Shown piece by piece: positions 3,717-63,599 of a DNA stretch of 64,000 bases. The stretch is from Octopus sinensis. Taxonomy: Eukaryota. The translations under genes were made by a program, and so were the position numbers. The first letter of the stretch is position 1, and each line of letters starts with the position of its first letter. Under the pieces are notes generated by a model. It did no database searches and was not told the origin of the DNA. It saw only the letters and a list, made by a program, of their open reading frames with translations. The DNA lies in assembly GCF_006345805.1 (NCBI RefSeq), contig NC_043012.1, positions 13,392,001 to 13,456,000 of the forward strand, read 5' to 3'.

Positions 3717-4174
3717 GTGTGTGTGTAGACTGACACACACACCGACACAGAGGCCGACAGACAGATACACACACACACTAACGTTTATATATATATAGAT
3801 ATTTAATTTCCCTCCCTGTAATAATTATATGTAGCCATAATTTTATATGCACATATAATATTTCTTCTATTATCAAACTTGTAAAAAACACATCGTATAC
3901 TTACCCATGTGTGTGGCTCCTTTAAGTTTAGTGTGCACTGGATATGCATAATTCGTTTGTGTCTTTTGCAAGCATCTGTCTACTTATGTAGGCATACAAA
4001 TTGATAAAAATTACCTTGTTCAAACCGGTTTTACACTTACACGCACTTATACATACACACTCATGTGGTTGTACAAATGTATTTATCAATATATATATAT
4101 ATATTATATATATATATATATATACATATTTACACGCACATACACACACACACATACACACACACATACACACA

Positions 4175-4226
<52 letters not shown>

Positions 4227-4393
4227 CTGTTTGTGTGTTCCTGTCATTTTTTGTACATATATATTCGGTTTCAGCTGGTCATAAAGATCTTCGTCAGTAT
4301 CTTTGGTGGGAACTCACCACTGATCCATCAATTGCTTATCTCTTAAAAAGGTTTTTTCAATCCCTACTGTTGCATCATTACACTTACCTAATC

Positions 4394-5563
4394 ATGTTAA
4401 AACTTCAGATGCTTTGGTATATTTTGCCACATATTTTGCACGCTTCCTCGGGGAATTCGCAGCATAAGTTGAGAGAGAATCTGTTTAAGAATTATAGCAA
4501 CACAATAAGACCTGTTCTGTACACAGACACAATCACAGATGTGGATTTATTTCTCTTTCCCTATGAGATTTACAAATTAGATTTAGGAGCTGGATTACTT
4601 ACTGCAAAATTCGTTATTGGTTACAAATGGACTGATGAATTCTTAGTGTGGAATAAAAGCCAATATGATAATATATCATCAATCAAAATGCCTTTGGTAA
4701 AAGTTTGGGAACCTCATGCATACGTGTGTAATGCTGAAAAAGTATATAGAATCAGGACTCCAAAACCCGAAGCATTGATATTATCCAATGGCACAATACA
4801 AACATCCACTGCGTGGGTATATACCACCTACTGTAAAATTGACAATACTAAATATCCTTTTGACATTCAGAATTGCGAAGTAATCATTTGTTTACCGTTA
4901 AGTAAACTAAATAATGTGAGAATTAAAACAATTATGACATTTAAAAAACAAGTTACCGTAGGAACCTGGAAAGTAGAAATAGACAAAGTGTTACCAAATT
5001 ATAATAAAAGTATTTGTCATGCATCGTGGCACTTAACACTAACGAAATTATCAACACAGTCGAAAATAATAATAATCATTCCACCTTTTCTACTAACATG
5101 TGTAACGATTGCTACTTTTCTTTTGCCCCCAGATACGAAACAAAAAGTCACTTTTTCTACAAACAGTTTTCTATCGATAATGCTTTATTTATCAAACATG
5201 TCAAAGGATTTATCATACCGCACAGCCAACCATTCTCTTCTATGGATATATGTCTTTTGCTTATCATGCATCAGCGCAATATCATGTATCGAATCGATAC
5301 TTGTTTGTCGCATTTATGTTTACCAAAAGGGCCAGGATCAATGTCAAATGTCTGAAAGAACAATATCATCGAATGACGACGTAGATATAAGTGAAACATG
5401 TAACAAACACTTGAATAAGAAATGGTTCGATGAAAGGAACACAATGAAGAAAAAATGCAAACATTTGAAATTTTTCCAACATAGATATATTGATAACTTT
5501 TGCTTGGTCTTCTTCACGTTGTTCTTTTTAATAATAGGTATAATTTTGAATTACATTGCATAG
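4394..5563 (+). CDS. Cephalopod chemotactile receptor-like (atypical nAChR-derived) Cys-loop channel subunit, 389 aa, uninterrupted CDS (here CR-a)
   Basis: ATG at 4394 gives a signal peptide (MLKLQMLWYILPHILHASSG), then RPV, WxDxxLxW, WxP, Cys-loop C-KIDNTKYPFDIQN-C (13 residues) and four TM helices (IIIIPPFLL; KVTFSTNSFLS; LLWIYVFCL; IDNFCLVFF). No vicinal CC and no loop B Trp. The track's start at 4001 is an upstream microsatellite read-through. Confidence 0.93.
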   Translation: MLKLQMLWYILPHILHASSGNSQHKLRENLFKNYSNTIRPVLYTDTITDVDLFLFPYEIYKLDLGAGLLTAKFVIGYKWTDEFLVWNKSQYDNISSIKMPLVKVWEPHAYVCNAEKVYRIRTPKPEALILSNGTIQTSTAWVYTTYCKIDNTKYPFDIQNCEVIICLPLSKLNNVRIKTIMTFKKQVTVGTWKVEIDKVLPNYNKSICHASWHLTLTKLSTQSKIIIIIPPFLLTCVTIATFLLPPDTKQKVTFSTNSFLSIMLYLSNMSKDLSYRTANHSLLWIYVFCLSCISAISCIESILVCRIYVYQKGQDQCQMSERTISSNDDVDISETCNKHLNKKWFDERNTMKKKCKHLKFFQHRYIDNFCLVFFTLFFLIIGIILNYIA

Positions 5564-11275: not shown

Positions 11276-11404
11276 AGATCCTAGAAGACACACAGAGACA
11301 GACAGAACGGATTTAATATAATATATATATATACACACACACATATATATATATACATATGTATGTATGTATGTTTTATGTATGTGTGTGTATGTATATG
11401 GATG

Positions 11405-11560
11405 CTGTTGTGTTTATGTCTCCGTAACTTAGCGGTTCGACACGAGAGAATGACAGAATAAGTACTAGGCTTACAGAGAATTAGTCCGGGGTTCGATTAG
11501 CGCGACTAAAGGCTGTGCTCCAGCATGGCCACAGTCAAATGACTGCAACAAATAAAAGAT
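11405..11560 (+). mobile_element. SINE family A 3' module
   Basis: CGTAACTTAGCGGTTCG...AGAATAAGTACTAGGCTTACA...GACTAAAGGC.GTGCTCCAGCATGGCC.CAGTCAAATGACTG, as at 35750-35893. Confidence 0.65.
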
Positions 11561-15054: not shown

Positions 15055-15907
15055 TATATTGAGGCCAGAAATTCTATATATATCTTCATTTTCCTTTGTA
15101 AGTGAAATGTGGAAAAAAATCGATGAGGACTTGGGGATACAGGAGGATATCTGTCTTCAGTAGCTTTTCTTACCTCAACTACACAACTTTCCTCTTCAAA
15201 GCCACCACACTGATAAGACAACTGCCCACACATCTTGGTCAAACAAATTTCCCGACAAGCAACTCGAACCTGAAAACACACTATCTGATAAACTCTAAAC
15301 CACACTACTGATATGTTTATGGAATTCAGCTTTTAAATAGGCAGAAATTCTAAGCTAAAGAAATAATGCGCAACCGAGAAATGAGTACTTATCGAAAGTA
15401 ATATAATGAAACATTTTCTATAAGTGTGCTTAAGATATTTTGCCGAATAGCATCAAGTTTGCTTTAGATTCTTCAAGAAATGTGCATTTACTTGCATCTT
15501 CAGAGAAAAATACTTTTATATATCTCTCTTTTACGCTTTTATTTGTGTGGTCACTCTCTTTCTTTCTTTCAGTCTTTCATTCGTTCTTTCTTTCTTATCT
15601 TATTTGTTTGTTTACTTCCTGTTTGCTTCTTTGCAAGAGAAAGAGAGAGAGAGAGAGGATGTGAGAGAGAAAGAAAGAAAGGGAAAGAGAGAACGTGAGA
15701 AAGAAAGAAAGAAAAAAGAGAGAGATCATATGTTTATAAAGAAGTGACAGTATTTGTAGATGCATATTAAGAAATGCAGAAGACACCAGTACTTCTTCTA
15801 TCGATCTCTTTTGACGTATACACACCAGCATCGGTTGTCAAGCGATGTTGGGGGGACAAACATAGACTCAAAAACATAAAACACACATACATATATATAT
15901 ACATATA

Positions 15908-16072
15908 TACGACGAGCTTCTTTCAGTTTCCGTCTACCAAATCCACTCACAAGGCTTTGGTCGGGCTGAAGCTATAGTAGAAGACACTTGCCCAAGGTGC
16001 CACGCAGTTGGACTGAACCCGGAACTATGTGGTTGATAAGCACGCTACTTACCGCACAGCCATTCCTGCGCC
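15908..16072 (-). mobile_element. tRNA-derived SINE, family A head
   Basis: Reverse complement of the 35520 head. Confidence 0.8.
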
Positions 16073-22000: not shown

Positions 22001-23164
22001 ATGTATGTTAAATTCTTATTTCTACCAACCGTCTTTGCTCTAGCAGTATCATGTAGCGAAGAAGTACTGTTACAAAAGGATTTGCTAACACATTACAATA
22101 AATATACAAGACCTGTACGAAATATAAATACAACTGTATTTGTTGATGTACGTGCATCTCTAAATAAACTTTATGATTTCAATGTATTTAAAGGAATACT
22201 CGTTGCAGAAATATATATTATAATGCGCTGGAAAGATGAATATCTTTGCTGGAACAAAACAGAGTATGGAAACGCAGAAAGTATCCTTTTACCTAAGGCT
22301 AACATTTGGACACCCAATATTTATATATGTAATGCTATCAAAATCATTGGCAATCATCGTTATGAACGTCAGGTTACGGTATGGCGGAATGGAAATGTAG
22401 AAGAAGAATCGTTTTATACATACCAACTATTCTGCGACGTTGATAATTCTCGATATCCGTTTGACGCACAACTTTGCCGCACGTATATATGCCTACCTTA
22501 TCAAAAGGACAACTTAACCCTGATTAAATCACTTCGTACAAATCCAGTAAGTGATATGGAAGGATGGCATATTGACACGAGTACTGAACCGCTGAAAACA
22601 TACAATGGCCAACAATTCGCAACTCTATCAATACGCTTAACCCGCACAGCTGTTATTAGCAGATTAATTATTATTTTACCGCCGATCATGCTGACGGTTT
22701 TAATAACATGCGCGTTTTTCTTACCAGCATCTGCAGGAGAGAAAGTAACATTTTCAACAACTGTTTTTCTTTCTAATATGGTTTATTTAATCGACAATAC
22801 CAACTTACTAACAAATACAGACGGGAAACTATGTTTGTTCCTGTTGTACCTAATGGGGCTGACAATCATGGGAGGAATTTCATGCATTAGTTCGATTTTG
22901 TTAAGTAGGATTTATATTTATCAGACTATACCGAGAACAACTGCAAAAATTAGTCCAATATCAACGGCAACAACAGAGAAAGAATCAAAAATAATTACTC
23001 AGGACACAAAATATTCCTTACCAAGAATATCATCATTAGAAGAGAGCAAAACCTCATTGAATGGAATGACGCGATGGGAAAAACTTGACAGATTCTTTTT
23101 TGTTCTGTCAACAACAATATTCATGATATTTACTTTGACTTTTGCAATACTTTATTCTCAATGA
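22001..23164 (+). CDS. Cephalopod chemotactile receptor-like Cys-loop channel subunit, 387 aa, uninterrupted CDS (here CR-b)
   Basis: Signal peptide MYVKFLFLPTVFALAVS, then YTRPV, WKDEYLCW, WTPNIYICNA, Cys-loop C-DVDNSRYPFDAQL-C, M1 IIILPPIML, GEK-M2, M3 and M4 (LDRFFFVL). No vicinal CC. The extracellular domain aligns without gaps to CR-a at roughly one-third identity by eye. Confidence 0.95.
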   Translation: MYVKFLFLPTVFALAVSCSEEVLLQKDLLTHYNKYTRPVRNINTTVFVDVRASLNKLYDFNVFKGILVAEIYIIMRWKDEYLCWNKTEYGNAESILLPKANIWTPNIYICNAIKIIGNHRYERQVTVWRNGNVEEESFYTYQLFCDVDNSRYPFDAQLCRTYICLPYQKDNLTLIKSLRTNPVSDMEGWHIDTSTEPLKTYNGQQFATLSIRLTRTAVISRLIIILPPIMLTVLITCAFFLPASAGEKVTFSTTVFLSNMVYLIDNTNLLTNTDGKLCLFLLYLMGLTIMGGISCISSILLSRIYIYQTIPRTTAKISPISTATTEKESKIITQDTKYSLPRISSLEESKTSLNGMTRWEKLDRFFFVLSTTIFMIFTLTFAILYSQ

Positions 23165-28967: not shown

Positions 28968-29042
<75 letters not shown>

Positions 29043-29250
29043 ATGTTTGTGTGTCTGTGTTTGTCCCCCCAACATCACTTGACAACTGATGCTGGTGCGC
29101 TTACCTCCTCGTAACTTAGCGGTTCGGCAAAACAAACCGATAGAATAAGTACTAGGCTTACAAAGAATAAGTCCTGGGGTCCATTTGCTCGACTAAAGGC
29201 GATGATCCAGCATGGCCACAGTCTGAAACAAGTAAAAGAGTAAAAGAGTA
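28928..29250 (+). mobile_element. SINE family A, 5'-truncated
   Basis: GAGTGGATTTGGTAAACGGAA...GAAGCC, then microsatellite, then the tail module. Confidence 0.75.
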
Positions 29251-30941: not shown

Positions 30942-31153
30942 CGAAGATGTGCTGAAATGTTCCTGGCTTTAATGGCATTGCGAAAGGCGTGGTTCGAGGC
31001 CCAACTTTTCGCGTTCTTTTACAGGGCTTAGAAGAACAGAAGCATCACCGCAATGCGTATCTGAGAGGGGAATATGTTTTTATAAAATCATAAATATTTG
31101 ATCCTCCTGTATGTTCTTTTACCCAACGCCAGGAGCTTTTCAGCAACACCACG
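30942..31153. mobile_element. Mariner-type MITE
   Basis: Imperfect TIRs CGAAGATGTGCTGAAATGTTCCTGGC and GCCAGGAGCTTTTCAGCAACACCACG, TA on both sides, 212 bp. Confidence 0.65.
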
Positions 31154-32328
31154 TAGATCAGGCTGATGCTTTAGTAATACTAAATAGAATGGAAAAATTA
31201 TGAAAGTGGGTTTTGTTTGATATGCTAATTGAACATCCTCTCTATTCAGCAAATCTATAAGAGGATATGAGGTTAGCGCAATGAAGATACATGGAGGGTT
31301 GATCGATTAGTCCGAAAATGCAACACATTCCTCTGACAACTCTATTGCATATTAGAGTTGTTAAGTGTAGAAAACATGAAAGAGAAGTTATTTCTTCATA
31401 TTTCACAATAATTCAATAAAATCAGGGTGTTTAAAATCAAGCGCAGTGCAATTTATCAAAAACATATACAAATCCTGACATATCAAAATTACAATAAAGT
31501 ATTTCTACCACACGTGTATATTAAATAAAAACAGTAATAAAGCAATTTGCACGAATTTGTCGTCATTTTAGATGGATATATTACTATAAATTTACGCAAG
31601 ACATCATACATTTCCACTAACGTTTTCATATTTACTTTGGAATTCAGTTTTGTTTACTTATTATCTTATTCATAACTGGGTTCTCTTTCAAGTAAATGTC
31701 TTATTGACGGCCTGGCTAAGTCGAAGAATATTATTATCTCCACATATTTTGACTTAGCTGATGTTCCGAAATAAAGGCATATCTTGTTTAGGCAGGCTGC
31801 CTAAATTGACAAGCGACTATGGCATGTGTGTTTTTAGAACATTTAGAAAGAAGAAAAGTTATATAAATGAAGTGAAATGTTCCTCTTTCTTCTATATCTT
31901 ACATGTCATCGGTACCGCGATAATTCTAAAAATATTAATCAAGTCTCTCTCAAACCACACTGTGGCATCTTACAAACAAATGAACAGATGTATTCAGAAT
32001 CTAATATATCTAAGCTCAAATGCTACGATGGTTACGCCCAGAATTTGTTTACACCTAGGCCTGGTAGATCAGAAGCTAATATTGATTACAAAGGAAGAAC
32101 AACCGACGCCGAAACCTGGCATTTGTGTAACTATTAAAGGTAGCATATCACACAAATACAGACAGAATAGTGGGATATCAAAAGAGCTGTCAGTTCTAGT
32201 TGGTGTAAATGTTTAATGCTTTGTGTCACATTAACGGTAGTTAAATTAATTACTACTTCAGCATGAGTCGACAAGGATTATTGGAATACTAGCAGTATCG
32301 CCCGGCGTTGCTCGGGTTTGTAAGGGAA

Positions 32329-35300
32329 GATCTCTTTCGGCACCATCTTTGATCTTTTTCGGCACACTCTTTGATCTCTGTCGGCACCTCCTTTGATCTC
32401 TGTCGGCACCACTCTTTGATCTCTGTCGGCACCCATCTTTGATCTATGTCGGCATCCCCTTTGATCTCTGTCGGTACATCCTTTGATCTCTGTCGGCACC
32501 CCTCTTTGATCTCTTTCGGCAACCCTTTGGTCTCTCTCGGCACCCCTCTTTGATCTCTGTCGGCACCCCTCTTTGATCTCTGTCGGAACCCCTTTGATCT
32601 CTGTCGGCACCCCTCTTTGATCTCTGTCGGCACCCCTCTTTGATCTCTGTCGGCACCCCTTTGATCTCTGTCGACACCCCTCTTTGATCTCTGTCGGCAC
32701 CCCTCTTTGATTTCTGTCGGCACCCCTCTTTGATCTCTGTCGGAACCCCTCTTTGAACTCTGTCGGCACCCTCTTTTATCTCTGTAGGTACCTGTCGGCA
32801 CACCCCTCTTTGATCTCTGTCGGTACCCCTCTTTGATCTATGTCGGCACCCCTTTGATCTCTGTCGGCACCCCTCTTTGATCTCTGTTGGCACCACCTTT
32901 CATCTCTGTCGGCACCCCCTTTGATCTCTGTCGGCACCCCATTGATCTCTGTCGGCACCCTCTTTTATCTCTGTCGATACCCCTCTTTAATCTCTGTCGG
33001 TACACTTTTTGATCGCTTTCGGCACCCCTCTTTGATCTCTGTCGGCACCCCCTTTGATCTCTGTCGGCACCCCCTTTGATCTCTGTCGGCACCCCCTTTG
33101 ATCTCTGTCGGCACTCCCTTTGATCTCTGTCGGCCACCCCCCCTTGATCTCTGTCGGCACCCCTTTTTGATCTCTGTCGGCACCCCTCTTTGATCTCTGT
33201 CGGCACCTCTTTGATCTCTGTCGGCCGCCCTTTGATCTTTGTCAGCACCCATCTTTGATCTCTGTCGGCAACCCCCCTTTGATCTCTGTCGGCACCTCTT
33301 TGATTCTGTCGATACCTCCTTTGATCTCTGTCGGCACCACTTTGATCTCTGTCGGCACCCCTCTTTGATCTCTGTCGGCACGCCTTTGATCTCTGTCGGC
33401 ACCCTCTTTGATCTCTGTCGGCACCCCCTTTGATCTCTGTCGGCACCCCTCTTTGATTTCTGTCGGGACCCTCCTCCTTTGATCTCTGTCGGCACCCCTC
33501 TTTGATCTCTGTCGGCACCCCTCTTTGATCTCTGTCGGCACCCCTTTGATCTCTCTCACACCCCTTTTGATCTCTGTCGGCACCCTCTTTGATCTCTCTC
33601 GGCAACCCTCTTTGTCTCTTCTCTGTCGGCACCCCTTTGATTTCTGTCGACACCCTTTTTGATCTCTGTCGGCACCCCTCTTTGATCTCTGTCGGCAACC
33701 CCTCTTTGATCTCTGTCGGCACCCCTTTGATCTCTGTCGACACCCCTCTTGATCTCTGTCGGCACCCTCTTTGATTTCTGTCGGCACCCCTCTTTGATCT
33801 CTGTTGGAACCCCTCTTTGATCTCTGTCGGCACCCTCTTTTATCTCTGTAGGCACCTGTCGCACACCCCTTTGATCTCTGTCGGTACCCCTCTTTGATCT
33901 ATGTCGGCACCCCTTTGATCTCTGTCGGCACCCCTCTTTGATCTCTGTTGGCACCACCTTTCATCTCTGTCGGCACCCCCTTTGATCTCTGTCGGCACCC
34001 CATTGATCTCTGTCGGCACCCTCTTTTATCTCTGTCGATACCCCTCTTTAATCTCTGTCGGTACCCTTTTTGATCGCTTTCGGCACCCCTCTTTGATTTC
34101 TGTCGGCACCCCCTTTGATCTCTGTCGGCACTCCCTTTGATCTCTGTGCTCCCTCTGATCTCTGTCGGCACCCCTCTTTGATCTCTGTTGGCACCCCTTT
34201 GATCTCTGTCGACACCCTCTTTGATCTCTGTCGATACCCCTCTTTGATCTCTGTCGGCACCCTCTTTGATCTCTGTCGGCACCCTCTTTGATTCCTCTCG
34301 GCACCCCTCTTTGATCTCTGTCGGCACCCCTCTTTGATCTCTGTCGGCACCCCTTTGATCTCTGTCGGCACCCTATTTGATCTCTATCGGCACCCCTCTT
34401 TGATTTCTGTCGGCACACCCATTGATCTCTGTCGGTACCACTCTTTGATCTCTGTCGACACCCTCTTTTATCTCTGTCGATACCCCTCTTTGATCTCTTT
34501 CGGCACCCTCTTTGATCTCTGTCGGCACCCCTCTTTGATCTCTGTCGGCACCCCCTTTGATCTCTGTCGACAACCCTTTTTGATCTCTGTCAGCACCCCT
34601 CTTTGATCTCTGTCGGCACTCTCTTTGGTCTCCCTCGGCCTCCCCTTTGATCTCTGTCGGCACCCCTCTTTGATCTCTGTCGGCACCCCTCTTTGATCTC
34701 TGTCGACACCCCTCTTTGATCTCTGTCGGCACCCCCTTTGATCTCTCTCAGCACCCCTTTGATCTCTGTCAGCACCCCTCTTTGATCTCTGTCGGCACCC
34801 CTCTTTGATCTCTGTCGGCACCCTCTTTGATTCCTGTCGGCACCCCTCTTTGATCTCTGTCGGCACCCCTCTTTGATCTCTGTCGGCCCCCTCTTTGATT
34901 GCTGTCGGCACCCCTCTTTGATCTCCGTCGGCACCGCCTTTGGTCTCTGTCGGCACCCTCTTTGATCTCTGTCGCACACCCCGGACCCCTCTTTGATCTC
35001 TGTCGGCCCCCTTTGATCCCTGTCAGCACCCCTCTTTGTCTCTGTCGGCACCCACTTTGATCTTGTCGGCACCCTTTTTAACCTCTGTCGGCACCCCTCT
35101 TTGATCTCTGTCGGCACCCCCTTTGATCTCTGTCGGCACCCCTCTTTGATTTCTGTCGGGACCTCCTTTGATCTCTGTCGGCACCCCTCTTTGATCTCTG
35201 TCGGCACCCCTTAGATCTATGTCGGCACCCTATTTGATCTCTGTCGGCACCCCCTTCGATCTCTGTCGACACCTTCTTTGATCTCTGTCGGCACCCCTCT

Positions 35301-35356
35301 TTGATCTCTGTCGGTACCCCTCTTTGATCTCTGTCGGCACCCCTCTTTGATCTCTG
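32329..35356. repeat. Minisatellite, consensus CTTTGATCTCTGTCGGCACCCCT (23 bp, variants 21-24 bp), about 130 units
   Basis: Direct reading; copy number estimated as length divided by unit size. Confidence 0.97.
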
Positions 35357-35519
35357 AGGCCTTGAATGGTGTAAAGCAATCTTGTTATCAGGTCTGACGT
35401 TCATCAAAACATATATTAATGAAATATTATAACCTAAGCAATGGGATACATTACCGTAACTACATTTATTTATGCACATACACACACTGCGAAATTGGGA
35501 GAGAATATATATATATAAT

Positions 35520-35893
35520 GGCGCAGGAGTGGCTGTGTGGTAAGTAGCTTGCTAACCAATCACATGGTTCCGGGTTCAGTCCAACTGCGTGACATCTTGG
35601 GCAAGTGTCTTCTACTATAGCCCCGGGCCGACCAATGACTTGTGAGTGGATTTGGTAGACGGAAATTGAAAGAAGCCTGTCGTATATATGTATGTGTATA
35701 TATGTATATGTGTGTGTTTGTGTGTCTGTGTTTGTCCCCCTAGCATTGCGTCCCCGTTACCTAGCGGTTCGGCAAAAGAGACCGATAGAATAAGTACTGG
35801 GCTTACAAAGAATAAGTCCCGGGGTCGATTTGCTCGACTAAAGGCGGTGCTCCAGCATGGCCGCAGTCAAATGACTGAAACAAGAAGAAGAAT
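35520..35893 (+). mobile_element. Full-length tRNA-derived SINE, family A
   Basis: Head GGCGCAGGAGTGGCTGTGTGG (A box) and GGTTCAGTCC (B-box-like), central (TG)n, and tail module ending GAAACAAGAAGAAG. Confidence 0.88.
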
Positions 35894-36243
35894 GTAAGCA
35901 TTTTCAGAGTGTTATAGCCAAAAAATAGCTAAAAAATGCATTAAAATTGGAAAAAAAATTATCGTAAATTTTTTTTAAATCGTTGACTCATCGTAGACAT
36001 TTTTAGAGAGTTACTTCCCTTATATAATAGCGAAAAAAATGCATTAAAATGGAAAAACATGATGGTAATTTTTTTTTAATCGTAGACTCATCGTAGACGC
36101 GCGCTAATACCCGGAAGGGCTCGATATGAATCACGACTATAAGATACCTGCTTTTGGTTACACTGCACCGCAAAATGTGGGAGTAGTTAGGAATCTAAAT
36201 CGTAGGAGACAGACACACAACTTCACTTTTATATATATATATA

Positions 36244-36625
36244 CTAGCAGTATCGCCCGGCGTTGCTCAGGTTTGTAAGGGAAATAACTATAAAGCATTT
36301 TTAGAGAGTTATAGCCAAAAAATAACAAAAAATGGAAAAAAATGATGGTAAATTTTTTTTTTAGTTAAAAAAGGTGGAGTTGCGTCCCCTAGACATTTTG
36401 CGGTTTGTGTTTCTGATTCTCGATCCCATGTCGAATTTATCGATTTTTTTCAGAACTGGGGGAACTTTTCAAAATTTTCGCTGCGTTAGTTTTGAATTAT
36501 GACATTGGGCTATGTGTGTGTCAAGTTTCATCAGAATCGTTTGAAAGCCGTGGTCAGGGTGAGGGTACAAGCAAACAGACACACAGAAACACGCACAGAC
36601 AAACTGCCGTTTATATAGAGAAAGA
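36244..36625 (-). mobile_element. Short non-autonomous Helitron, head-to-tail with the previous one
   Basis: Minus strand starts A|TCTTTCTCTATATAAACGGCAGTTTGTCTGTG; 3' end ...CCGGGCGATACTGCTAG|T is identical to that at 32289. Confidence 0.75.
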
Positions 36626-37954
36626 TAATGCTATGCTTATGGAATATAAAGACAACAACCCCAAATCAATGCAGTTAACAGAAAGTGAAGGCAATGATAA
36701 AGGCCACATTTACGAAAATTCACATATTCTGAATACATGTTTTATACAGTTTCTATTTAATTTGCTGCTCCCCTCGATCAGAGTTTCGATTTACAGGATT
36801 GTCGTTCATGTGAAACTCAAAGCATAAACTTCTAGGAATTACAACCGTGTTTCGTGGTCTGCTACCACAACAGCTCCTTCATAGGACCCAGTTAGCTTTT
36901 GACGTGCCCCTCCCCACCTTTCGGAGATGTCTTTAGCTCTGATATTGGATGCATGTCTTCTTCTTTCTTCTGTTCGATGTATCGTCAGCGAGTGTCAGCC
37001 GGTGACTGACAGACTTGTCAATTTTTTGCATTTAAAAAGAAATGAAACCTAAACCTGTTTCGGTACCCAGGTAGAGATACGTCATTCCTTTTGTTAAAAA
37101 GTGTCGTTCATTAAATATTTTGTGAATAAACTCCAGCTCGCCGGAATCTGCATGCAATATTTTGTTTTATCAATACCAGCTTACAAAGCAAGCTAGTAAA
37201 AAAAAAAAACCAAATCCTATTCGATTGAATACATCGTTATGCGAGATAAATGTTCTGGTTCAATTGCTATAATTTTCATTTTACTCGCAGCTCATATTTT
37301 AGAAATATGTTATAAGAATCTTTTCCGGTTGTCAGTTTTCTGATAGCTTTATCGTCCATCTAGATCTGCTGGTATTTTTTGTTATCTAATCAGTAATTTT
37401 ATGCCATGGCATATTAAAGAACGTCAAATTGGTATAAAATGGAATAATATGTCTTACTGGTTATTGTAATGTATTATATCCACTTAAGCTTCCAAACACT
37501 GCGCATCATTATAAAACTTTTCCCATAAGTTTATTTATAATGCTTGCTTCAAGCATACAATTCCATTAGACGGGAATTATTTCAGCGTGCTTGGCCTTTA
37601 ATCGATTAAACCTGCAGCACTATACTGGAAGGATCAAGTCCTTCGTATGTCTCTCCTCAAAAAATGCTGTTGATTCTATTAAACATTTGAGTGGAATAAA
37701 ACCATTCATAATGGAGTACCAAGCAGTATGCCAACGTTCCGGGAATCAAAGTTATGATATATCGATCTTCAAACCAAAACTACATCTGGCATCACTATTT
37801 CCTTTGTTGTTTCAGTTGAGTTATTTCTAGTATTCGTCAGCTTACAAGTCATGCATTACGCTCCACAATCATTCCTTGACATATCTTATCTTATTCCTTG
37901 ACATATCTTATTTTTATATCATGAATAATATTCATAATATTATTTATTCCTCAA

Positions 37955-38400
37955 TACTTACTTACTTGTACTTATGGCGACATTCACCCTAGGCGGGTGG
38001 AATCGGCTTCTTCTACCACCCTCGAGGCATCTCGAGCCATGGCAGCCCACGCACGACGGTCCTGCGCCAGTTCACTGGAGATAGCGAGCCAGTCACGGTT
38101 CCATCGGCACAGGCTGACCACCTGTGGACCCGTGAGCACGGAGAGGTCCTCTTTGATCGTCGTAACCCATGTCTTCAGCTGCCCGCCCGCGCATTTCCAC
38201 CAGTTGGGAAGTGGAGTTGGGAGAAAGACATCACGGCCCAGTTCACCCACCGGACGCCTTAAATGCATGGCCAAACCACCGCAAACGCCGTTGCAAAAGG
38301 ACAGATGGAAGGGGCCGCAGAGATAGGCGAAGTCGGAGATTGGCAGTGGGAACTCGATCCACCCGACGGCAGCGAAGAATGCACCGGAGGCAGTCATTGT
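37955..38400 (-). mobile_element. RTE-clade LINE 3' end
   Basis: ORF 37984-38397 contains HLRRPVGEL...GGQLKTWVTTIKEDL...LAQDRRAW (RTE C-terminus), followed by a CAAGTAAGTAAGTA tail. Confidence 0.8.
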
Positions 38401-39339: not shown

Positions 39340-40435
39340 CACAGAACTCTCACTGTATATTGTATTTGTTTGTCCGTGGACAATGTATCTCAACAACCAC
39401 TTGATGGATTCGGCTGAAAGTTTCAGGGATCTTTGGCCCCGTAACTAGCACGAACTGATAATATTTTGGGATCGATCTAGTACCTGACAAGGATTCTGGA
39501 TTATTTGTTATATTTACTTTACATGAAGTATTACTATCTTACGCCCACTTTCAAGTCTTCCTCTGATTATCTCTCTTGGAAGCACGCTCATAGTTCCCTT
39601 GTAAGTTATGGCAGCGTTGCTATTTCCAAAGTTTTATTTTCGCTTCTCTATTATTCATTTTACTCGCGTCTCTACCTTAGTACAAACTGATGGATGAAGT
39701 AATCAAACTACCTAAACAAACTGAAGCAAAACCGATCAGAAAGTTAATAACACTAATATGCTAAATAGCAATAATAAATTTAATTTATCCTAAACAAACG
39801 AATTTAAAACCGTTCAGAAAGTAAATAATATTAACATATTCAAAAGTAATAATAAATTTAGTTTATCCGCAACAATTTTTTGCTTTACCAATTTCAAATA
39901 TATCGCTCCTGTTAAAAGAATTCTTAGCTACTTCACAATTGCATTTCTAAATCTGCCTTGAAGGAAGCTTTAATTCTTAGACTTACTCTTTTGTGCGCAA
40001 CGATGTTGCTAAACCTCAGTTAACAGCACCGTATGCAGATCACTTTTGTTTCTTTCACGCACGGATAATTTTTCCCTATAAACCCTAATGGCAGTAAAGA
40101 CACTATATCATTAGATAGACTAAAAAAGGGCTTCATAGACGAAACTGTCCATGTTCTCACTGCAAACCACACACACATCATTACAAACACGGCCCGCACA
40201 CCCAACTTCATGTTCCATGATTATCACTGGGATCGATCAGGTACCGGGCAAGGATTCTGGATTATTTTGCCGGTTTTTTACTTCATTTTTGAGAGAGGTA
40301 GGGTTCAATTTTAGTGTTCTCGTTTATAAAAGTAATCGAGTTTATTTCAGATATTCTCGTTTTAAACTCACATCCGGCGAATCGTTGAGAGCAGTTCTTG
40401 TTGCCTTGCCGGGGGTTTGCGCTCTCTGAGTACTC

Positions 40436-51941: not shown

Positions 51942-52232
51942 AGTCATTTCACGGCGGCCAAAACTTAAAGGAAAATCGACCTCAGGACTTATTCTTTGTA
52001 AGCCTAGTATTTATTCTATCCCCCTCTCTTGGTGAACTGCTATATTATGGGGACATAAACACACCAACATCTGGGACGGTCTTCTTTCAATCACCGTCTA
52101 CGAAATCCGCTGAAAAGTCTTTGGTCGGCCCGTAGTTATAGTAGAAGACACATTCCCAAAATAAAACGCAATGGAACTGAACCCGGAACTATGTGGTTGG
52201 GAAGGAAGCTTGTAAGAACACAGGCACGCCTG
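51942..52232 (-). mobile_element. tRNA-derived SINE, family A, decayed
   Basis: Head at 52078-52232 and tail module at 51942-52075 on the minus strand. Confidence 0.7.
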
Positions 52233-52372
52233 CGTCTATACACACACACACGCGCGCATACACATACATATATACACACACACACACACACACATACGTC
52301 TGTTACTCATAAATACAAGCTCATATCTTTCTGTACGGATATACGTATAGATGACTGCATGTGTGTGTGTTT

Positions 52373-62173: not shown

Positions 62174-62246
<73 letters not shown>

Positions 62247-62260
62247 TATTATTATCATCA

Positions 62261-62312
<52 letters not shown>

Positions 62313-62319
62313 TTTTTTT

Positions 62320-63450
62320 TTCTTCTTTCAAATTTTCTTCCATTTCTTGCCGAGTGTCTTCCCGACTCCTAGGGCAAAGAAACTCATAGTGTATATTGGT
62401 AGGCCATTAAACCAAACTCAGTAGTTCGTTCATTTTTTTTAAAATTAATATACATGAGCAGCAACAGTTCTCACATCGACAATGCTCTTCTCAATACGTG
62501 TGATGTACCAGTTAAGACAATCTTTTGCACTTCTTGCAGGGATGGTAAGCCAGGGATCATTCTCATATAATTTTCGGTTCCCTTCTTGATCATTCCTAGT
62601 GCTCCTACGATCACTAGTATTGTAACCGCCTTGAGATGCCACATTTTCTCAACTTCAATGGGTAGGTCTTTATATTTTCTGAGCTTGGGATGCTCATGTC
62701 GATCAATAAGCAAACTTTATTGTTTTGGTCTTTCACAACAATATCTGGTTTATTGGCCTTGATGGTTCGGTCTGTATGTACTGGAAAGTCCCACAGAATG
62801 GTTACATTTTCTCCTTCAGTTACAGCCTCAGGGTGGTGATTATACCACTTGTCGGCAGTTTTGATATTGTAATGCCGACTTATTAGCCAGTGGAGATATT
62901 GGCCAACTCTGTCATGTCTTAATTTATACTCCACTGGTGCTAAGACTTTACATCCAGAGATTAAGTGGTCCACTGTTTCAATCATGTCGTTGCAGAATCG
63001 GCATTTTGGGTCTGCTCCATTTTTCATCACATTGGCCTGGTAGTTCTGGGTTAATAGGCTTTGGTCTTGAGCAGCCACGATGAAACCTTCGCTCTCTGCT
63101 TTTAGCCCTGAGCTCCGCACCCACTGATGGGTTTGATTCTGGTCAACATCAGCTTGTTTGCTGCGGGTCACATATTTGCCGTGCAGAGGTTTCTCCTCCC
63201 ACCTATCAGCCAATTGCTCGTGCGCTTTTTTCATTGCCATCATTTTCACCTTCTTTGCAACAATAGTTGTCGTACTTCCCTCGGGTTGTTCAGTTTGGGT
63301 ATCCTGCACGAGATCAATAGCAAATTTTTTGCTTTCCTTGATGATAGAATGAAGCTTCTTTCGTCTCTCGTGATTTTCCACGAGCTTTAGCATCCAGTCA
63401 TTCGATATTTCGAGATATTTGGCCAGTCCAATTGTGGTTGTTTTGTAAGC
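62320..63450 (-). mobile_element. R4/Dong-like LINE 3' portion (different subfamily), best-preserved copy
   Basis: WEEKPLHGKY, THQWVRSSGLKAESEGFIVAAQDQ, CRFCNDMIETVDHLISGC, LWDFPVHTDRTIKANKPDIVV..CLLIDMSIP (REL PD..D), then a frameshift to KLRKYKDL...GTSHVLRRALSM*; (TAA)n on both sides. Confidence 0.92.
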
Positions 63451-63482
63451 TAGTTTTATTATTATTATTATTATTATTATTA

Positions 63483-63517
<35 letters not shown>

Positions 63518-63545
63518 TGTATTATTATTATTATTATTATTATTA

Positions 63546-63589
<44 letters not shown>

Positions 63590-63599
63590 GCCATTACCT

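What the first reader, a model, noticed from the sequence alone, without database searches (positions are those of the whole stretch)
32329..35356. A natural TOPflash: ~130 tandem TCF/LEF sites, each beside a helper-like site
Seen: nearly every 23-bp unit contains CTTTGATC (often CCTTTGATCT), followed 2 nt later by TGTCGGC, which is GCCGACA on the other strand; the previous unit's copy sits 5-6 nt upstream. Known: CCTTTGATC is the optimal TCF/LEF HMG site used in Wnt reporters, and invertebrate TCFs also bind GC-rich helper sites (GCCGCCR, core RCCG) through the C-clamp at short spacings. Inference: the array could be a strong Wnt-responsive enhancer or a TCF sink 9 kb from a chemoreceptor gene. 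Caveat: any short unit may match some motif by chance, and there is no functional evidence here.
Basis: partly seen in the sequence, partly recalled or inferred. Interest (0 to 1): 0.72.

Follow-up and report, generated by a model that had tools for sequence, protein, structure and literature searches.

The report
Octopus minisatellite resembling TCF binding sites
A 3-kb run of about 134 copies of a 21-23-base unit in an octopus genome belongs to a repeat family found at several unrelated chromosomal sites; each unit does look like a binding site for the Wnt-pathway factor TCF, but nothing shows that it works as a gene switch.

Summary
The array is real: 32329-35356, 134 units of 21-23 bp. "Nearly every unit" is overstated. 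CTTTGATC occurs in 91 units, the optimal CCTTTGATC in 33, TGTCGGC in 85, and the exact composite in 60.

On paper the TCF grammar is good. The helper-like site GCCGACA keeps the critical GCCG and fits the worm Helper consensus GCCRAnW. It lies 3-5 nt from the HMG-like site in the favoured "Akimbo" orientation. The fly Helper GCCGCCR never occurs.

The array is not a locus-specific element. The same unit forms arrays of 0.35-9.2 kb at three other sites on two Octopus vulgaris chromosomes, and their flanks are unrelated. In the window, the array, 155 bp of unique DNA and a SINE-like repeat together interrupt a Helitron-like element 41 bp from its 3' end. Other copies of that element lack the array.

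Within the window array, substitutions follow base composition and do not spare the motifs. Across the family, GATCAAAG and GCCGACA are kept while the G-rich spacer varies.

Best reading: a dispersed, TE-associated minisatellite. TCF binding is plausible in vitro, but enhancer or sink function is unsupported.

The parts
32329..35356 (.). Minisatellite array of about 134 units of 21-23 bp. The + strand consensus is CACCCCTCTTTGATCTCTGTCGG and the - strand reads GATCAAAGAGGGGTGCCGACAGA. Length variation lies in the C/T tract.
   Evidence: TRF; wraparound alignment and per-position table; motif counts.
32660..33120 (.). Block of about 15-20 units that is duplicated 1,061 bp further on, at about 33721-34180.
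   Evidence: Identity is 92-99% at offset 1,061 against 80-93% at control offsets. Ten variant units match at a 47-unit offset, eight of them consecutive.
32289..32328 (-). Conserved 3' terminal segment of a Helitron-like element (...TTCCCTTACAAACCCGAGCAACGCCGGGCGATACTGCTAG followed by T). It abuts the array directly.
   Evidence: A second copy lies at 36244-36283. Five ends in the window and in O. vulgaris all finish CTAG followed by T. The subterminal hairpin is weak.
35357..35511 (.). 155 bp of unique sequence between the array and the SINE-like repeat. Together with those two it forms the 3.57-kb block that interrupts the Helitron-like element.
   Evidence: No match elsewhere in the window, L001 or L002.
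35512..35891 (+). Copy of an abundant SINE-like interspersed repeat.
   Evidence: BLAST matches to at least six other places in the window at 70-82% identity, and to several places in O. vulgaris L001. ARAGORN calls no tRNA here.
35896..36243 (-). 5' body of the interrupted Helitron-like copy (Element 1). Its homology stops at ...GAAAATGCTT, 9 bp short of where the 3' terminal segment at 32328 resumes.
   Evidence: 90% identity over 252 bp to the complete short element in O. vulgaris L001 14207-14604; alignment A1.
36244..36617 (-). Uninterrupted short copy of the same Helitron-like family (Element 2), without an array. Its CTAG end abuts the start of Element 1.
22001..23164 (+). Intronless Cys-loop receptor ORF, an octopus chemotactile-receptor relative. 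It is the 'chemoreceptor gene 9 kb away'.
   Evidence: Pfam Neur_chan_LBD E = 2.5e-30; PDB 8EIS 'Octopus sensory receptor' E = 7.8e-48 and CRT1 9E6B.

Best explanation
The feature is one array of a dispersed minisatellite (satellite-DNA-like) family of octopus genomes. Its monomer is about 22-23 bp with a conserved 18-nt core, GCCGACAGAGATCAAAGA, and a variable G-rich segment of 4-5 nt.

Shown:
- The same monomer builds arrays at several unrelated chromosomal sites in another octopus species.
- The window array changes by slippage in the C/T tract and by duplication of multi-unit blocks.
- The window array lies within a 3.57-kb block that interrupts a non-autonomous Helitron-like element 41 bp from its 3' end.

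Inferred:
- The array reached this site by insertion of pre-existing satellite DNA (transposon-mediated, or by repair or reintegration of extrachromosomal repeat DNA), not by growing from local sequence.
- It persists through the usual expansion, contraction and homogenisation dynamics of tandem repeats, without a locus-specific regulatory role.
- The TCF-like HMG + Helper grammar belongs to the monomer and was amplified with it. Such DNA would probably bind a C-clamp TCF in vitro, but that is not the reason the array exists here.
For: Array anatomy.

Same family elsewhere in O. vulgaris GCA_951406725.2:
- OX597818.1 at about 51.1 Mb: 9.2 kb of the 22-bp unit GATCAAAGACGGTGCCGACAGA.
- OX597822.1, near the chromosome end: 2.1 kb of the 23-bp unit GATCAAAGAGGAATGCCGACAGA and 0.35 kb of the 22-bp unit GATCAAAGAGGGTGCCGACAGA, next to 34-bp and 74-bp satellites.
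- The flanks of the four arrays share no homology apart from common interspersed repeats.

Dynamics: there is a recent block duplication inside the window array. Deletions concentrate at two positions of the C/T tract.

No sparing of motifs in the window array, stratified by base type:
- HMG-like 8-mer against the rest, A/T positions: 1.6% vs 2.4%, p = 0.32.
- HMG-like 8-mer against the rest, G/C positions: 6.4% vs 7.2%, p = 0.65.
- Helper-like G/C positions 8.2% against linker 6.2%.

Decay of the grammar: part of the O. vulgaris array is a 10-bp derivative, GATCAAACCG, that has lost the CAAAG core.

Transposon context: the Helitron-like 3' end abuts the array. The element's body resumes beyond the block with only 9 bp missing, and two other copies have no array.

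Other readings fail: no RNA family, no strand self-structure, and no protein family.

Precedent: dispersed satDNA-like arrays linked to Helitron/Helentron elements are documented in other molluscs (PMC7492417, PMC8268682, PMC5139131).
Against: - The four array consensus sequences differ only in the 4-5-nt spacer. GATCAAAGA and GCCGACAGA are identical in all four, and spacer length stays at 4-5 nt. This is what constraint on a bipartite protein-binding site would give.
- In the O. vulgaris arrays the GATCAAAG octamer is the least variable part of the unit, even among distinct unit types.
- The on-paper match to a bipartite TCF site is unusually good. For a pre-specified factor it is improbable by chance, at about 1e-4 per random unit.
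- The mode of dispersal is not shown. Only one of the four arrays touches a Helitron-like end.
- Only three loci outside the window could be examined.
Confidence: 0.7

Rival explanations
1. The arrays are real multi-site platforms for TCF or another HMG-box protein. Each unit offers an HMG site plus a C-clamp Helper site in Akimbo orientation. The array would then act as a Wnt-responsive enhancer, or as a sink that titrates TCF or Groucho, and selection on binding keeps the two motifs while the spacer drifts.
For: - Motif quality and geometry: CTTTGATC in 91 units, GCCGACA in 85, AK spacing of 3-5 nt.
- Literature rules: the first four Helper bases are the critical ones, AK6 is optimal, and any nearby Helper increases binding. 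The worm consensus is GCCRAnW.
- Near-identity to the synthetic HMG-Helper reporter unit.
- Conservation between arrays and between species of both motifs and of spacer length, with a variable spacer sequence.
- GATCAAAG is the least variable block in the O. vulgaris arrays.
- CpG is not preferentially decayed: 9 of 133 units changed at the CpG, and CpG o/e is 0.69. This argues weakly against heavy germline methylation.
Against: - There is no sparing of either motif within the window array after control for base type, and the Helper-like positions are never spared.
- The family consensus is GATCAAAGA. The optimal S-flanked 9-mer is in only 33 of 103 WWCAAAG sites in the window array, 15 of 302 in L001 and 16 of 74 in L002a.
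- The full fly 11-mer fits one unit of the window array, and GCCGCCR occurs in none of the four arrays.
- The 2 nt between the Helper-like site and the next HMG-like site are conserved as well. A single contiguous 18-nt core plus a slippage-prone G run would explain the pattern without selection.
- The array locations are unrelated and include a subtelomeric satellite cluster and the inside of a transposon.
- One array has partly converted to a 10-bp derivative that lacks CAAAG.
- The motif was picked after the fact. The same unit also contains a CACCC box and fits the generic SOX/HMG core WWCAAWG (my own knowledge).
Confidence: 0.13
2. The array is cargo of a Helitron-like transposon. Tandem repeats just upstream of the 3' hairpin are a regular component of an array-bearing subfamily, and transposition of that subfamily spreads the satellite around the genome, as in oyster Helentron-derived elements.
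For: - The array ends exactly at the conserved 41-bp 3' terminus of a Helitron-like element, the usual place for Helitron internal repeats.
- The 5' body of the same element lies on the other side of the block.
- There is a precedent in molluscs (PMC7492417, PMC8268682).
- A Helitron-like 3' end lies 750 bp from the large O. vulgaris array.
Against: - Two uninterrupted copies of the element (window 36244-36617 and L001 14207-14604) have 9 bp where the 3.57-kb block sits, so the block looks like a later insertion.
- None of the three O. vulgaris arrays abuts a Helitron-like end. One abuts a LINE 3' tail and another abuts (AAT)n.
- The block also holds a SINE-like repeat and 155 bp of unrelated DNA.
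Confidence: 0.12
3. The array is expressed. Either it yields a repetitive protein from the stop-free minus strand (ORFs up to 331 aa, 23-aa period GVPTEIKEGCRQRSKRGADRDQR), or it is a source of structured or small RNAs.
For: - The minus strand has no stop codon in the consensus unit, which gives many overlapping ORFs.
- The O. vulgaris annotation contains a 'hypothetical predicted protein' built wholly on such an array. The transporter gene model P0003 starts inside the second array and matches the array translation.
Against: - The 23-bp period with 7% indels shifts the frame constantly, so all three frames are open only because the unit lacks stops. About a third of random 23-mers would be the same ((61/64)^23, my arithmetic).
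- The only protein hits among 5.8 billion sequences are these two array-derived models, and no Pfam domain is recorded for the array-derived model P0001.
- No Rfam match.
- Both strands fold worse than shuffled controls, z = +2.1 and +2.3.
Confidence: 0.03

Closest known systems
Synthetic multimerised TCF reporters: TOPflash-type HMG-site multimers and the 6xHMG-Helper reporter (unit GGAAGATCAAAGGGGGTAGCCGCCAGT, quoted in PMC3916239)
   Same: - Head-to-tail repeats of an AGATCAAAG(G) HMG site followed by a G-rich spacer and a GCCG-type Helper site in Akimbo orientation.
- The 22-bp units of the array differ from the matching 23 nt of the synthetic unit by one deletion and one substitution.
   Different: - The array is natural, has about 134 diverged copies rather than 6-8, and has no minimal promoter.
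- The Helper is GCCGACA and never GCCGCC.
- Most units carry GATCAAAGA rather than GATCAAAGG.
- No response to Wnt signalling has been tested. The identity of the spacer is coincidental, because the reporter's spacer is an arbitrary design choice.
Dispersed satellite-DNA-like arrays associated with Helitron/Helentron non-autonomous elements in bivalve molluscs (Crassostrea gigas; PMC7492417, PMC8268682) and the satDNA-TE networks of PMC5139131
   Same: - A mollusc genome with short-to-medium arrays of one monomer family scattered over chromosomes, not confined to one heterochromatic block.
- An array lying next to a rolling-circle transposon end.
   Different: - The monomer is much shorter, 22-23 bp, which puts it in the minisatellite range.
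- Only one of four arrays touches a Helitron-like end, and intact copies of that element lack the array. The link to the transposon therefore looks secondary here.
Tandem repeats that carry transcription-factor sites, such as CTCF-binding macrosatellites and GGAA microsatellites used by ETS fusion proteins (my own knowledge)
   Same: A repeat unit that contains a factor's recognition sequence can create a very high local density of sites, with real effects on chromatin or transcription.
   Different: In those cases occupancy and function were shown experimentally. Here only the sequence resemblance exists.

Membership tests
Minisatellite / dispersed satellite-DNA family | Head-to-tail tandem array of a 10-100-bp unit with many copies | tested here: met
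   134 copies of a 21-23-bp unit, 81% matches.
Minisatellite / dispersed satellite-DNA family | The same monomer forms arrays at several unlinked loci | tested here: met
   Three further arrays on two O. vulgaris chromosomes with unrelated flanks. The count in the window's own genome could not be made.
Minisatellite / dispersed satellite-DNA family | Array-specific variants and higher-order or block duplications, indicating unequal exchange and homogenisation | tested here: met
   Each array has its own spacer variant or alternating unit types. A block of about 460 bp is duplicated at 92-99% identity in the window array.
Bipartite TCF Wnt-response element (HMG site + Helper site) | HMG site matching SCTTTGWWSWW, with core CTTTGWWS | tested here: inconclusive
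   CTTTGATC is in 91 units and WWCAAAG in 103. The S-flanked 9-mer is in only 33 units and the full 11-mer in 1. The core is met but the flanks are suboptimal in most units.
Bipartite TCF Wnt-response element (HMG site + Helper site) | Helper site for the C-clamp: fly GCCGCCR, worm GCCRAnW, vertebrate GCSGS or RCCG | tested here: inconclusive
   Matches: GCCGCCR 0, GCSGS 1, GCCRAnW 98, RCCG 104. The consensus sequences are from PMC4154663 and PMC3916239. The preference of the octopus C-clamp is unknown.
Bipartite TCF Wnt-response element (HMG site + Helper site) | Helper within about 10 bp of the HMG site in a productive orientation (AK about 6 or FF0 best) | tested here: met
   Akimbo orientation with 3, 4 or 5 nt in 12, 28 and 40 units, plus KK0 with the following Helper-like site (rules).
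Bipartite TCF Wnt-response element (HMG site + Helper site) | Bound by TCF and activated by beta-catenin signalling; activity lost when the sites are mutated | not testable with these tools
   No binding, chromatin or expression data are available.
Bipartite TCF Wnt-response element (HMG site + Helper site) | Motif positions under stronger constraint than the spacer | tested here: inconclusive
   Window array: no sparing after control for base type. Across four arrays, the consensus differences lie only in the spacer, and GATCAAAG is least variable in the O. vulgaris arrays, but the Helper-like positions are not spared. Units are not independent observations.
Helitron (non-autonomous rolling-circle transposon): the element that the array interrupts | 3' terminus CTRR followed by host T; 5' terminus TC preceded by host A; no target-site duplication and no terminal inverted repeats | tested here: met
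   Five of five ends finish ...CTGCTAG followed by T. The complete copy L001 14207-14604 reads gaagtA|TCTTTATAT...CTGCTAG|Ttaac with no duplication. The 5' ends of the two window copies are blurred by TA-rich sequence.
Helitron (non-autonomous rolling-circle transposon): the element that the array interrupts | GC-rich hairpin about 10 nt upstream of the 3' terminus | tested here: inconclusive
   A 6-bp bulged stem, CCCG-A-GC/GC-CGGG, ends 8 nt upstream of CTAG. It is weak (-4.5 kcal/mol, z about -1) and is lost in one copy.
Helitron/Helentron-borne tandem repeat, as in oyster HINE-type elements | The array is a constant internal component of the element's copies | tested here: not met
   Two other copies of the element have no array at that position. 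Three other arrays have no Helitron-like terminus at their edges.

The most novel reading that the evidence does not exclude
Octopus genomes carry a satellite family whose monomer is a working bipartite TCF site (HMG + C-clamp Helper, Akimbo, 4-5 nt spacing). Array-level selection would keep this grammar across species, so arrays of 100-400 units would act as Wnt-responsive super-enhancers or as nuclear sinks that buffer TCF, Groucho or beta-catenin dosage. The array studied here lies inside the chemotactile-receptor gene cluster.
Probability: 0.1. Interest if true: 0.75.

Novelty: new member of a known kind. Interest (0 to 1): 0.3.

Why it matters
As it stands, this is an ordinary class of object, a dispersed TE-associated minisatellite. 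Its main practical lessons are cautionary.
- A short repeat unit that matches a famous motif becomes "130 sites" by amplification alone.
- Such arrays have already produced spurious gene models in the O. vulgaris annotation.

It is still a cheap and clean test case. The unit is within two changes of the matching stretch of an engineered HMG-Helper reporter, and its two motif blocks and spacer length are shared by arrays in two octopus species. A gel shift with octopus TCF with and without the C-clamp, plus a reporter with 6-12 units, would show quickly whether a natural satellite can recruit the Wnt effector. If it does, satellite copy number would become a plausible variable in Wnt dosage in cephalopods.

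I found no description of octopus satellite DNA in the literature searched.

Tried and rejected
- **Coding repeat.** The minus strand is stop-free. However, the period is 23 bp with frequent indels. The only protein hits in 5.8 billion sequences are two O. vulgaris gene models built on sister arrays. Rejected.
- **Structured RNA or DNA.** No Rfam match at E <= 0.1 in 31000-37500. Both strands fold worse than shuffles. Rejected.
- **tRNA-derived head of the neighbouring SINE-like repeat.** ARAGORN finds nothing. The repeat is therefore called only "SINE-like".
- **Orthologous locus in another species.** The chemoreceptor ORF is not in the protein collection by exact look-up. Its only homologue at E <= 1e-30 is a 74%-identical protein on a 1.8-kb contig. 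Presence or absence of the array at the syntenic site could not be tested.
- **Metagenome scan with the 18-nt core.** It returned 33 contigs, each with a single chance match and no arrays.
- **Terminal inverted repeats or target-site duplications around the array, or flank repeats elsewhere in the window.** None was found except the 43-bp Helitron-like terminus.
- **Contamination by a reporter plasmid.** Rejected. The units are diverged, carry GCCGACAGAG rather than the reporter's Helper site, lie in octopus repeats, and recur in an independent O. vulgaris assembly.
- **Resemblance to the LEF-1 site of the TCR-alpha enhancer (from memory).** It reduces to CCCTTTGA, so I dropped it.
- **G-quadruplex on the minus strand.** G4 runs are 19 nt apart, too far for a canonical quadruplex. 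Not pursued.
- **Species of the window.** Not determined. The repeat families are 82-97% identical to those of O. vulgaris.
Full report
**1. The observation**

Tandem Repeats Finder reports 32329-35356, period 23 (equally well 45 = 22+23), 134.3 copies, 81% matches and 7% indels. I aligned the whole stretch to a circular 23-mer and obtained 136 units.

The + strand consensus is CACCCCTCTTTGATCTCTGTCGG. On the - strand it reads GATCAAAGAGGGGTGCCGACAGA. Units are 23, 22 or 21 bp long (37, 24 and 17 GATC-to-GATC distances). Nearly all the length variation is loss of one base at two positions of the C/T tract (42 and 39 units).

The array is 54% G+C against 34% for the rest of the window. Its + strand is 72% pyrimidine.

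Exact motif counts are lower than "nearly every unit":

| Motif (+ strand) | Units |
|---|---|
| CTTTGATC | 91 |
| CTTTGAT | 102 |
| CCTTTGATC | 33 |
| TGTCGGC | 85 |
| CTTTGATC-NN-TGTCGGC | 60 |

A block of roughly 460 bp (about 32660-33120) recurs 1,061 bp further on at 92-99% identity, against 80-93% at control offsets. The array has therefore grown by multi-unit duplication.

**2. The surroundings**

The window looks like octopus DNA. It is AT-rich and full of microsatellites, with many copies of one SINE-like repeat.

It holds two intronless Cys-loop receptor ORFs. The one at 22001-23164 carries Neur_chan_LBD. Its best solved relatives are the octopus sensory receptor 8EIS (E = 8e-48) and chemotactile receptor CRT1.

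The 43 bp directly left of the array recur once more in the window, at 36241-36283, without an array. Read on the minus strand they are ...TTCCCTTACAAACCCGAGCAACGCCGGGCGATACTGCTAG followed by T.

The same terminus occurs three times in the Octopus vulgaris loci I fetched. All five copies end CTAG followed by T, while the sequence upstream of the last ~35-40 bp differs between copies.

One O. vulgaris copy (L001 14207-14604) is a complete 398-bp element reading gaagtA|TCTTTATAT...CTGCTAG|Ttaac, with no target duplication. Those are the hallmarks of a non-autonomous Helitron. The subterminal hairpin is only weak.

In the window, on the minus strand, the order is:
- Element 2, an uninterrupted short copy (36617 to 36244).
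- The 5' body of Element 1 (36243 to 35896), 90% identical to the O. vulgaris copy.
- A 3.57-kb block: the SINE-like repeat at 35512-35891, 155 unique bp, and the array.
- The last 41 bp of the element (32328 to 32289).

Alignment A1 shows that the block replaces just 9 bp (TATAGTTAT on the element's strand) that are present in the two other copies. So the array lies inside one Helitron-like copy, and it is not a regular part of that element.

**3. Relatives elsewhere**

Translating the stop-free minus strand and searching the protein collection found one O. vulgaris "hypothetical predicted protein". A second search, with the translation of its array, found the transporter gene model P0003. 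Both led to DNA from assembly GCA_951406725.2.

| Array | Location | Size | Unit consensus |
|---|---|---|---|
| Window | 32329-35356 | 3.0 kb | GATCAAAGAGGGGTGCCGACAGA (23 bp) |
| L001 | OX597818.1, about 51.1 Mb | 9.2 kb | GATCAAAGACGGTGCCGACAGA (22 bp) |
| L002a | OX597822.1, 33-120 kb from the chromosome end | 2.1 kb | GATCAAAGAGGAATGCCGACAGA (23 bp), alternating with a ...GGAGTACCGAC... type |
| L002b | same locus as L002a | 0.35 kb | GATCAAAGAGGGTGCCGACAGA (22 bp) |

- The L001 array is interleaved with a derived 10-bp repeat, GATCAAACCG.
- L002b abuts 34-bp and 74-bp satellites.
- Apart from common interspersed repeats, the flanks of the four arrays are unrelated.
- L002a is followed by the 3' tail of a LINE plus (TAA)n. 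The same tail is present in the window at 62314-62534.
- None of the O. vulgaris arrays abuts a Helitron-like end.

The object is therefore a dispersed minisatellite family shared by at least two octopus genomes. An 18-nt scan of the metagenome collection gave only single chance matches.

**4. How good is the TCF reading?**

The literature I read gives these rules:
- Fly HMG site: SCTTTGWWSWW.
- Fly Helper: GCCGCCR. The first four bases are the most critical.
- Helpers must be close to the HMG site.
- The Akimbo orientation with 6 nt (AK6) and FF0 are best. AK5 was used in the first binding assays.
- Any nearby Helper increases binding (PMC4154663).
- The C. elegans Helper consensus is GCCRAnW and the vertebrate one is GCSGS or RCCG (PMC3916239, PMC4267635).

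Against these rules the unit scores as follows:
- The Helper-like GCCGACA is 6/7 to the fly consensus with GCCG intact, and 7/7 to the worm consensus.
- It stands in Akimbo orientation 3, 4 or 5 nt from the HMG-like 11-mer in 12, 28 and 40 units. It abuts the next HMG-like site as KK0.
- The 22-bp unit AGATCAAAGGGGGTGCCGACAG is one deletion and one substitution from the matching 23 nt of the synthetic 6xHMG-Helper reporter unit GGAAGATCAAAGGGGGTAGCCGCCAGT.

On the other side:
- GCCGCCR never occurs in any of the four arrays.
- The S-flanked 9-mer is in only 33 of 103 WWCAAAG sites in the window array, 15 of 302 in L001 and 16 of 74 in L002a. The family consensus is GATCAAAGA.
- The full 11-mer fits a single unit of the window array.

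A random 23-mer unit carries CTTTGATC with p about 0.0007-0.001, and together with RCCG with p about 0.0001. That is unlikely for one pre-chosen factor. The motif was chosen after seeing the sequence, however, and an octopus genome has very many tandem-repeat families. From my own knowledge, the same unit also contains a CACCC box and fits the generic SOX/HMG core WWCAAWG.

**5.

In the window array, substitutions per site are 0.038 in CTTTGATC, 0.059 in the Helper-like heptamer, and 0.045 in each linker.

G/C positions mutate about three times as often as A/T positions. Once that is controlled, the HMG-like octamer is not spared:

| Positions | HMG-like octamer | Rest of unit | p |
|---|---|---|---|
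| A/T | 1.6% | 2.4% | 0.32 |
| G/C | 6.4% | 7.2% | 0.65 |

The Helper-like G/C positions are, if anything, more variable than the linker (8.2% vs 6.2%).

This test has little power, because selection on one unit among 134 would be negligible.

The comparison between arrays is more informative, and it points the other way:
- The four consensus sequences are identical over GCCGACAGAGATCAAAGA and differ only in the 4-5-nt G-rich spacer. Spacer length stays at 4-5 nt.
- In the two large O. vulgaris arrays GATCAAAG is the least variable block, also when each distinct unit type is counted once.

Caveats to the between-array result:
- Units are not independent.
- The spacer is a slippage-prone G run, with a CpG in L001.
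- The 2 nt between the Helper-like and the next HMG-like site are conserved as well. The pattern is therefore equally one contiguous core plus one hypermutable run.
- The Helper-like positions are not spared within any array.
- Part of the L001 array has turned into a 10-bp repeat that has lost CAAAG.

**6. Other readings**

- The minus strand has ORFs up to 331 aa, but only because the unit lacks stop triplets.
- There is no protein family behind those ORFs.
- There is no Rfam match.
- Neither strand folds; both do worse than shuffles.
- CpG is not preferentially lost: 9 of 133 units are changed at the CpG, against 10-14 at several non-CpG G/C positions. CpG o/e is 0.69, against 0.84 for the rest of the window. 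This gives no sign of heavy germline methylation and says nothing about somatic chromatin.

**7. Verdict**

The array is real. The motif description is correct in kind but inflated in number.

The thing itself is one array of a dispersed minisatellite family. It lies within a 3.57-kb block that interrupts a Helitron-like transposon copy in the spacer of a chemotactile-receptor gene cluster.

Dispersed satDNA-like arrays entangled with Helitron/Helentron elements are a known feature of mollusc genomes (PMC7492417, PMC8268682, PMC5139131). I found no description of this family, or of octopus satellites generally.

The resemblance to a bipartite TCF site is real on paper and would probably give binding in vitro. 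Nothing here shows function in vivo, and the genomic distribution is that of a satellite, not of an enhancer.

| Reading | Probability |
|---|---|
| Selfish or neutral satellite | about 0.7 |
| Functional TCF/HMG-box platform | about 0.13 |
| Helitron carriage as the means of spread | about 0.12 (overlaps with the first) |

Noticed in passing
window 4001-5563 (+) and 22001-23164 (+): Two intronless Cys-loop receptor ORFs with Neur_chan_LBD. The second is closest to the solved octopus chemotactile receptors (8EIS, CRT1). The first ORF as listed starts far upstream of its domain (aa 155-310) inside microsatellite-derived sequence, so its true start is probably a later ATG. The window is part of a chemotactile-receptor gene cluster.
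   Followed up: partly
window 36244-36617 (-) and 35896-36243 (-); L001 14207-14604, 1357-1398; L002 50668-50709: A family of short non-autonomous Helitron-like elements (TC...CTGCTAG, inserted at A|T) shared with O. vulgaris at 90-97% identity. In the window, the CTAG end of one copy directly abuts the start of the next, in a head-to-tail arrangement.
   Followed up: partly
window 62202-63594 (-); L002 10793-11040, 11756-12002, 13581-13829, 15705-15953, 23530-23771: The 3' end of a retroelement: an ORF with a weak zf-RVT match, a tail of about 248 bp, then (TAA)n. In O. vulgaris L002 the same tail plus (TAA)n directly follows one satellite array. It is itself multiplied into 411-487-bp higher-order tandem repeats.
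   Followed up: partly
L001 10001-10753 (P0001); L002 10001-76402 (P0003): The public O. vulgaris annotation contains gene models built on this satellite. One is a 250-aa 'hypothetical predicted protein' lying wholly inside the array. The other, 'proton myo-inositol cotransporter-like', starts inside the second array and matches the array translation. Both are probably annotation artefacts caused by the stop-free strand.
   Followed up: partly
L001 2318-2803, 3141-3305, 4350-5003, 7230-7483, 8637-8890, 10874-11048: A 10-bp repeat (GATCAAACCG / GTTCAAACCG) is interleaved with the 22-bp units. It looks derived from them by internal deletion, a satellite giving birth to a shorter satellite.
   Followed up: no
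L002 25304-26307 and 26408-27356: Two further satellites (34-bp and 74-bp units) directly adjoin the small array, 33-120 kb from the end of chromosome record OX597822.1. This is a subtelomeric cluster of unrelated tandem repeats.
   Followed up: no
window 35512-35891 (+), with copies at 1822-2040, 15786-16072, 52075-52234, 11348-11559, 29012-29239 and others: A very abundant SINE-like repeat with an internal TA/TG microsatellite. There are at least six partial or complete copies in the 64-kb window and several in each O. vulgaris locus. ARAGORN does not recognise a tRNA in its head.
   Followed up: partly
window 39711-39875: A 78-bp tandem repeat (2.1 copies) reported by TRF. Not examined.
   Followed up: no
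window 37984-38397 (-): A 137-aa ORF whose sequence looks like the C-terminal tail of a LINE-type reverse-transcriptase ORF (my reading). It has no Pfam match.
   Followed up: partly
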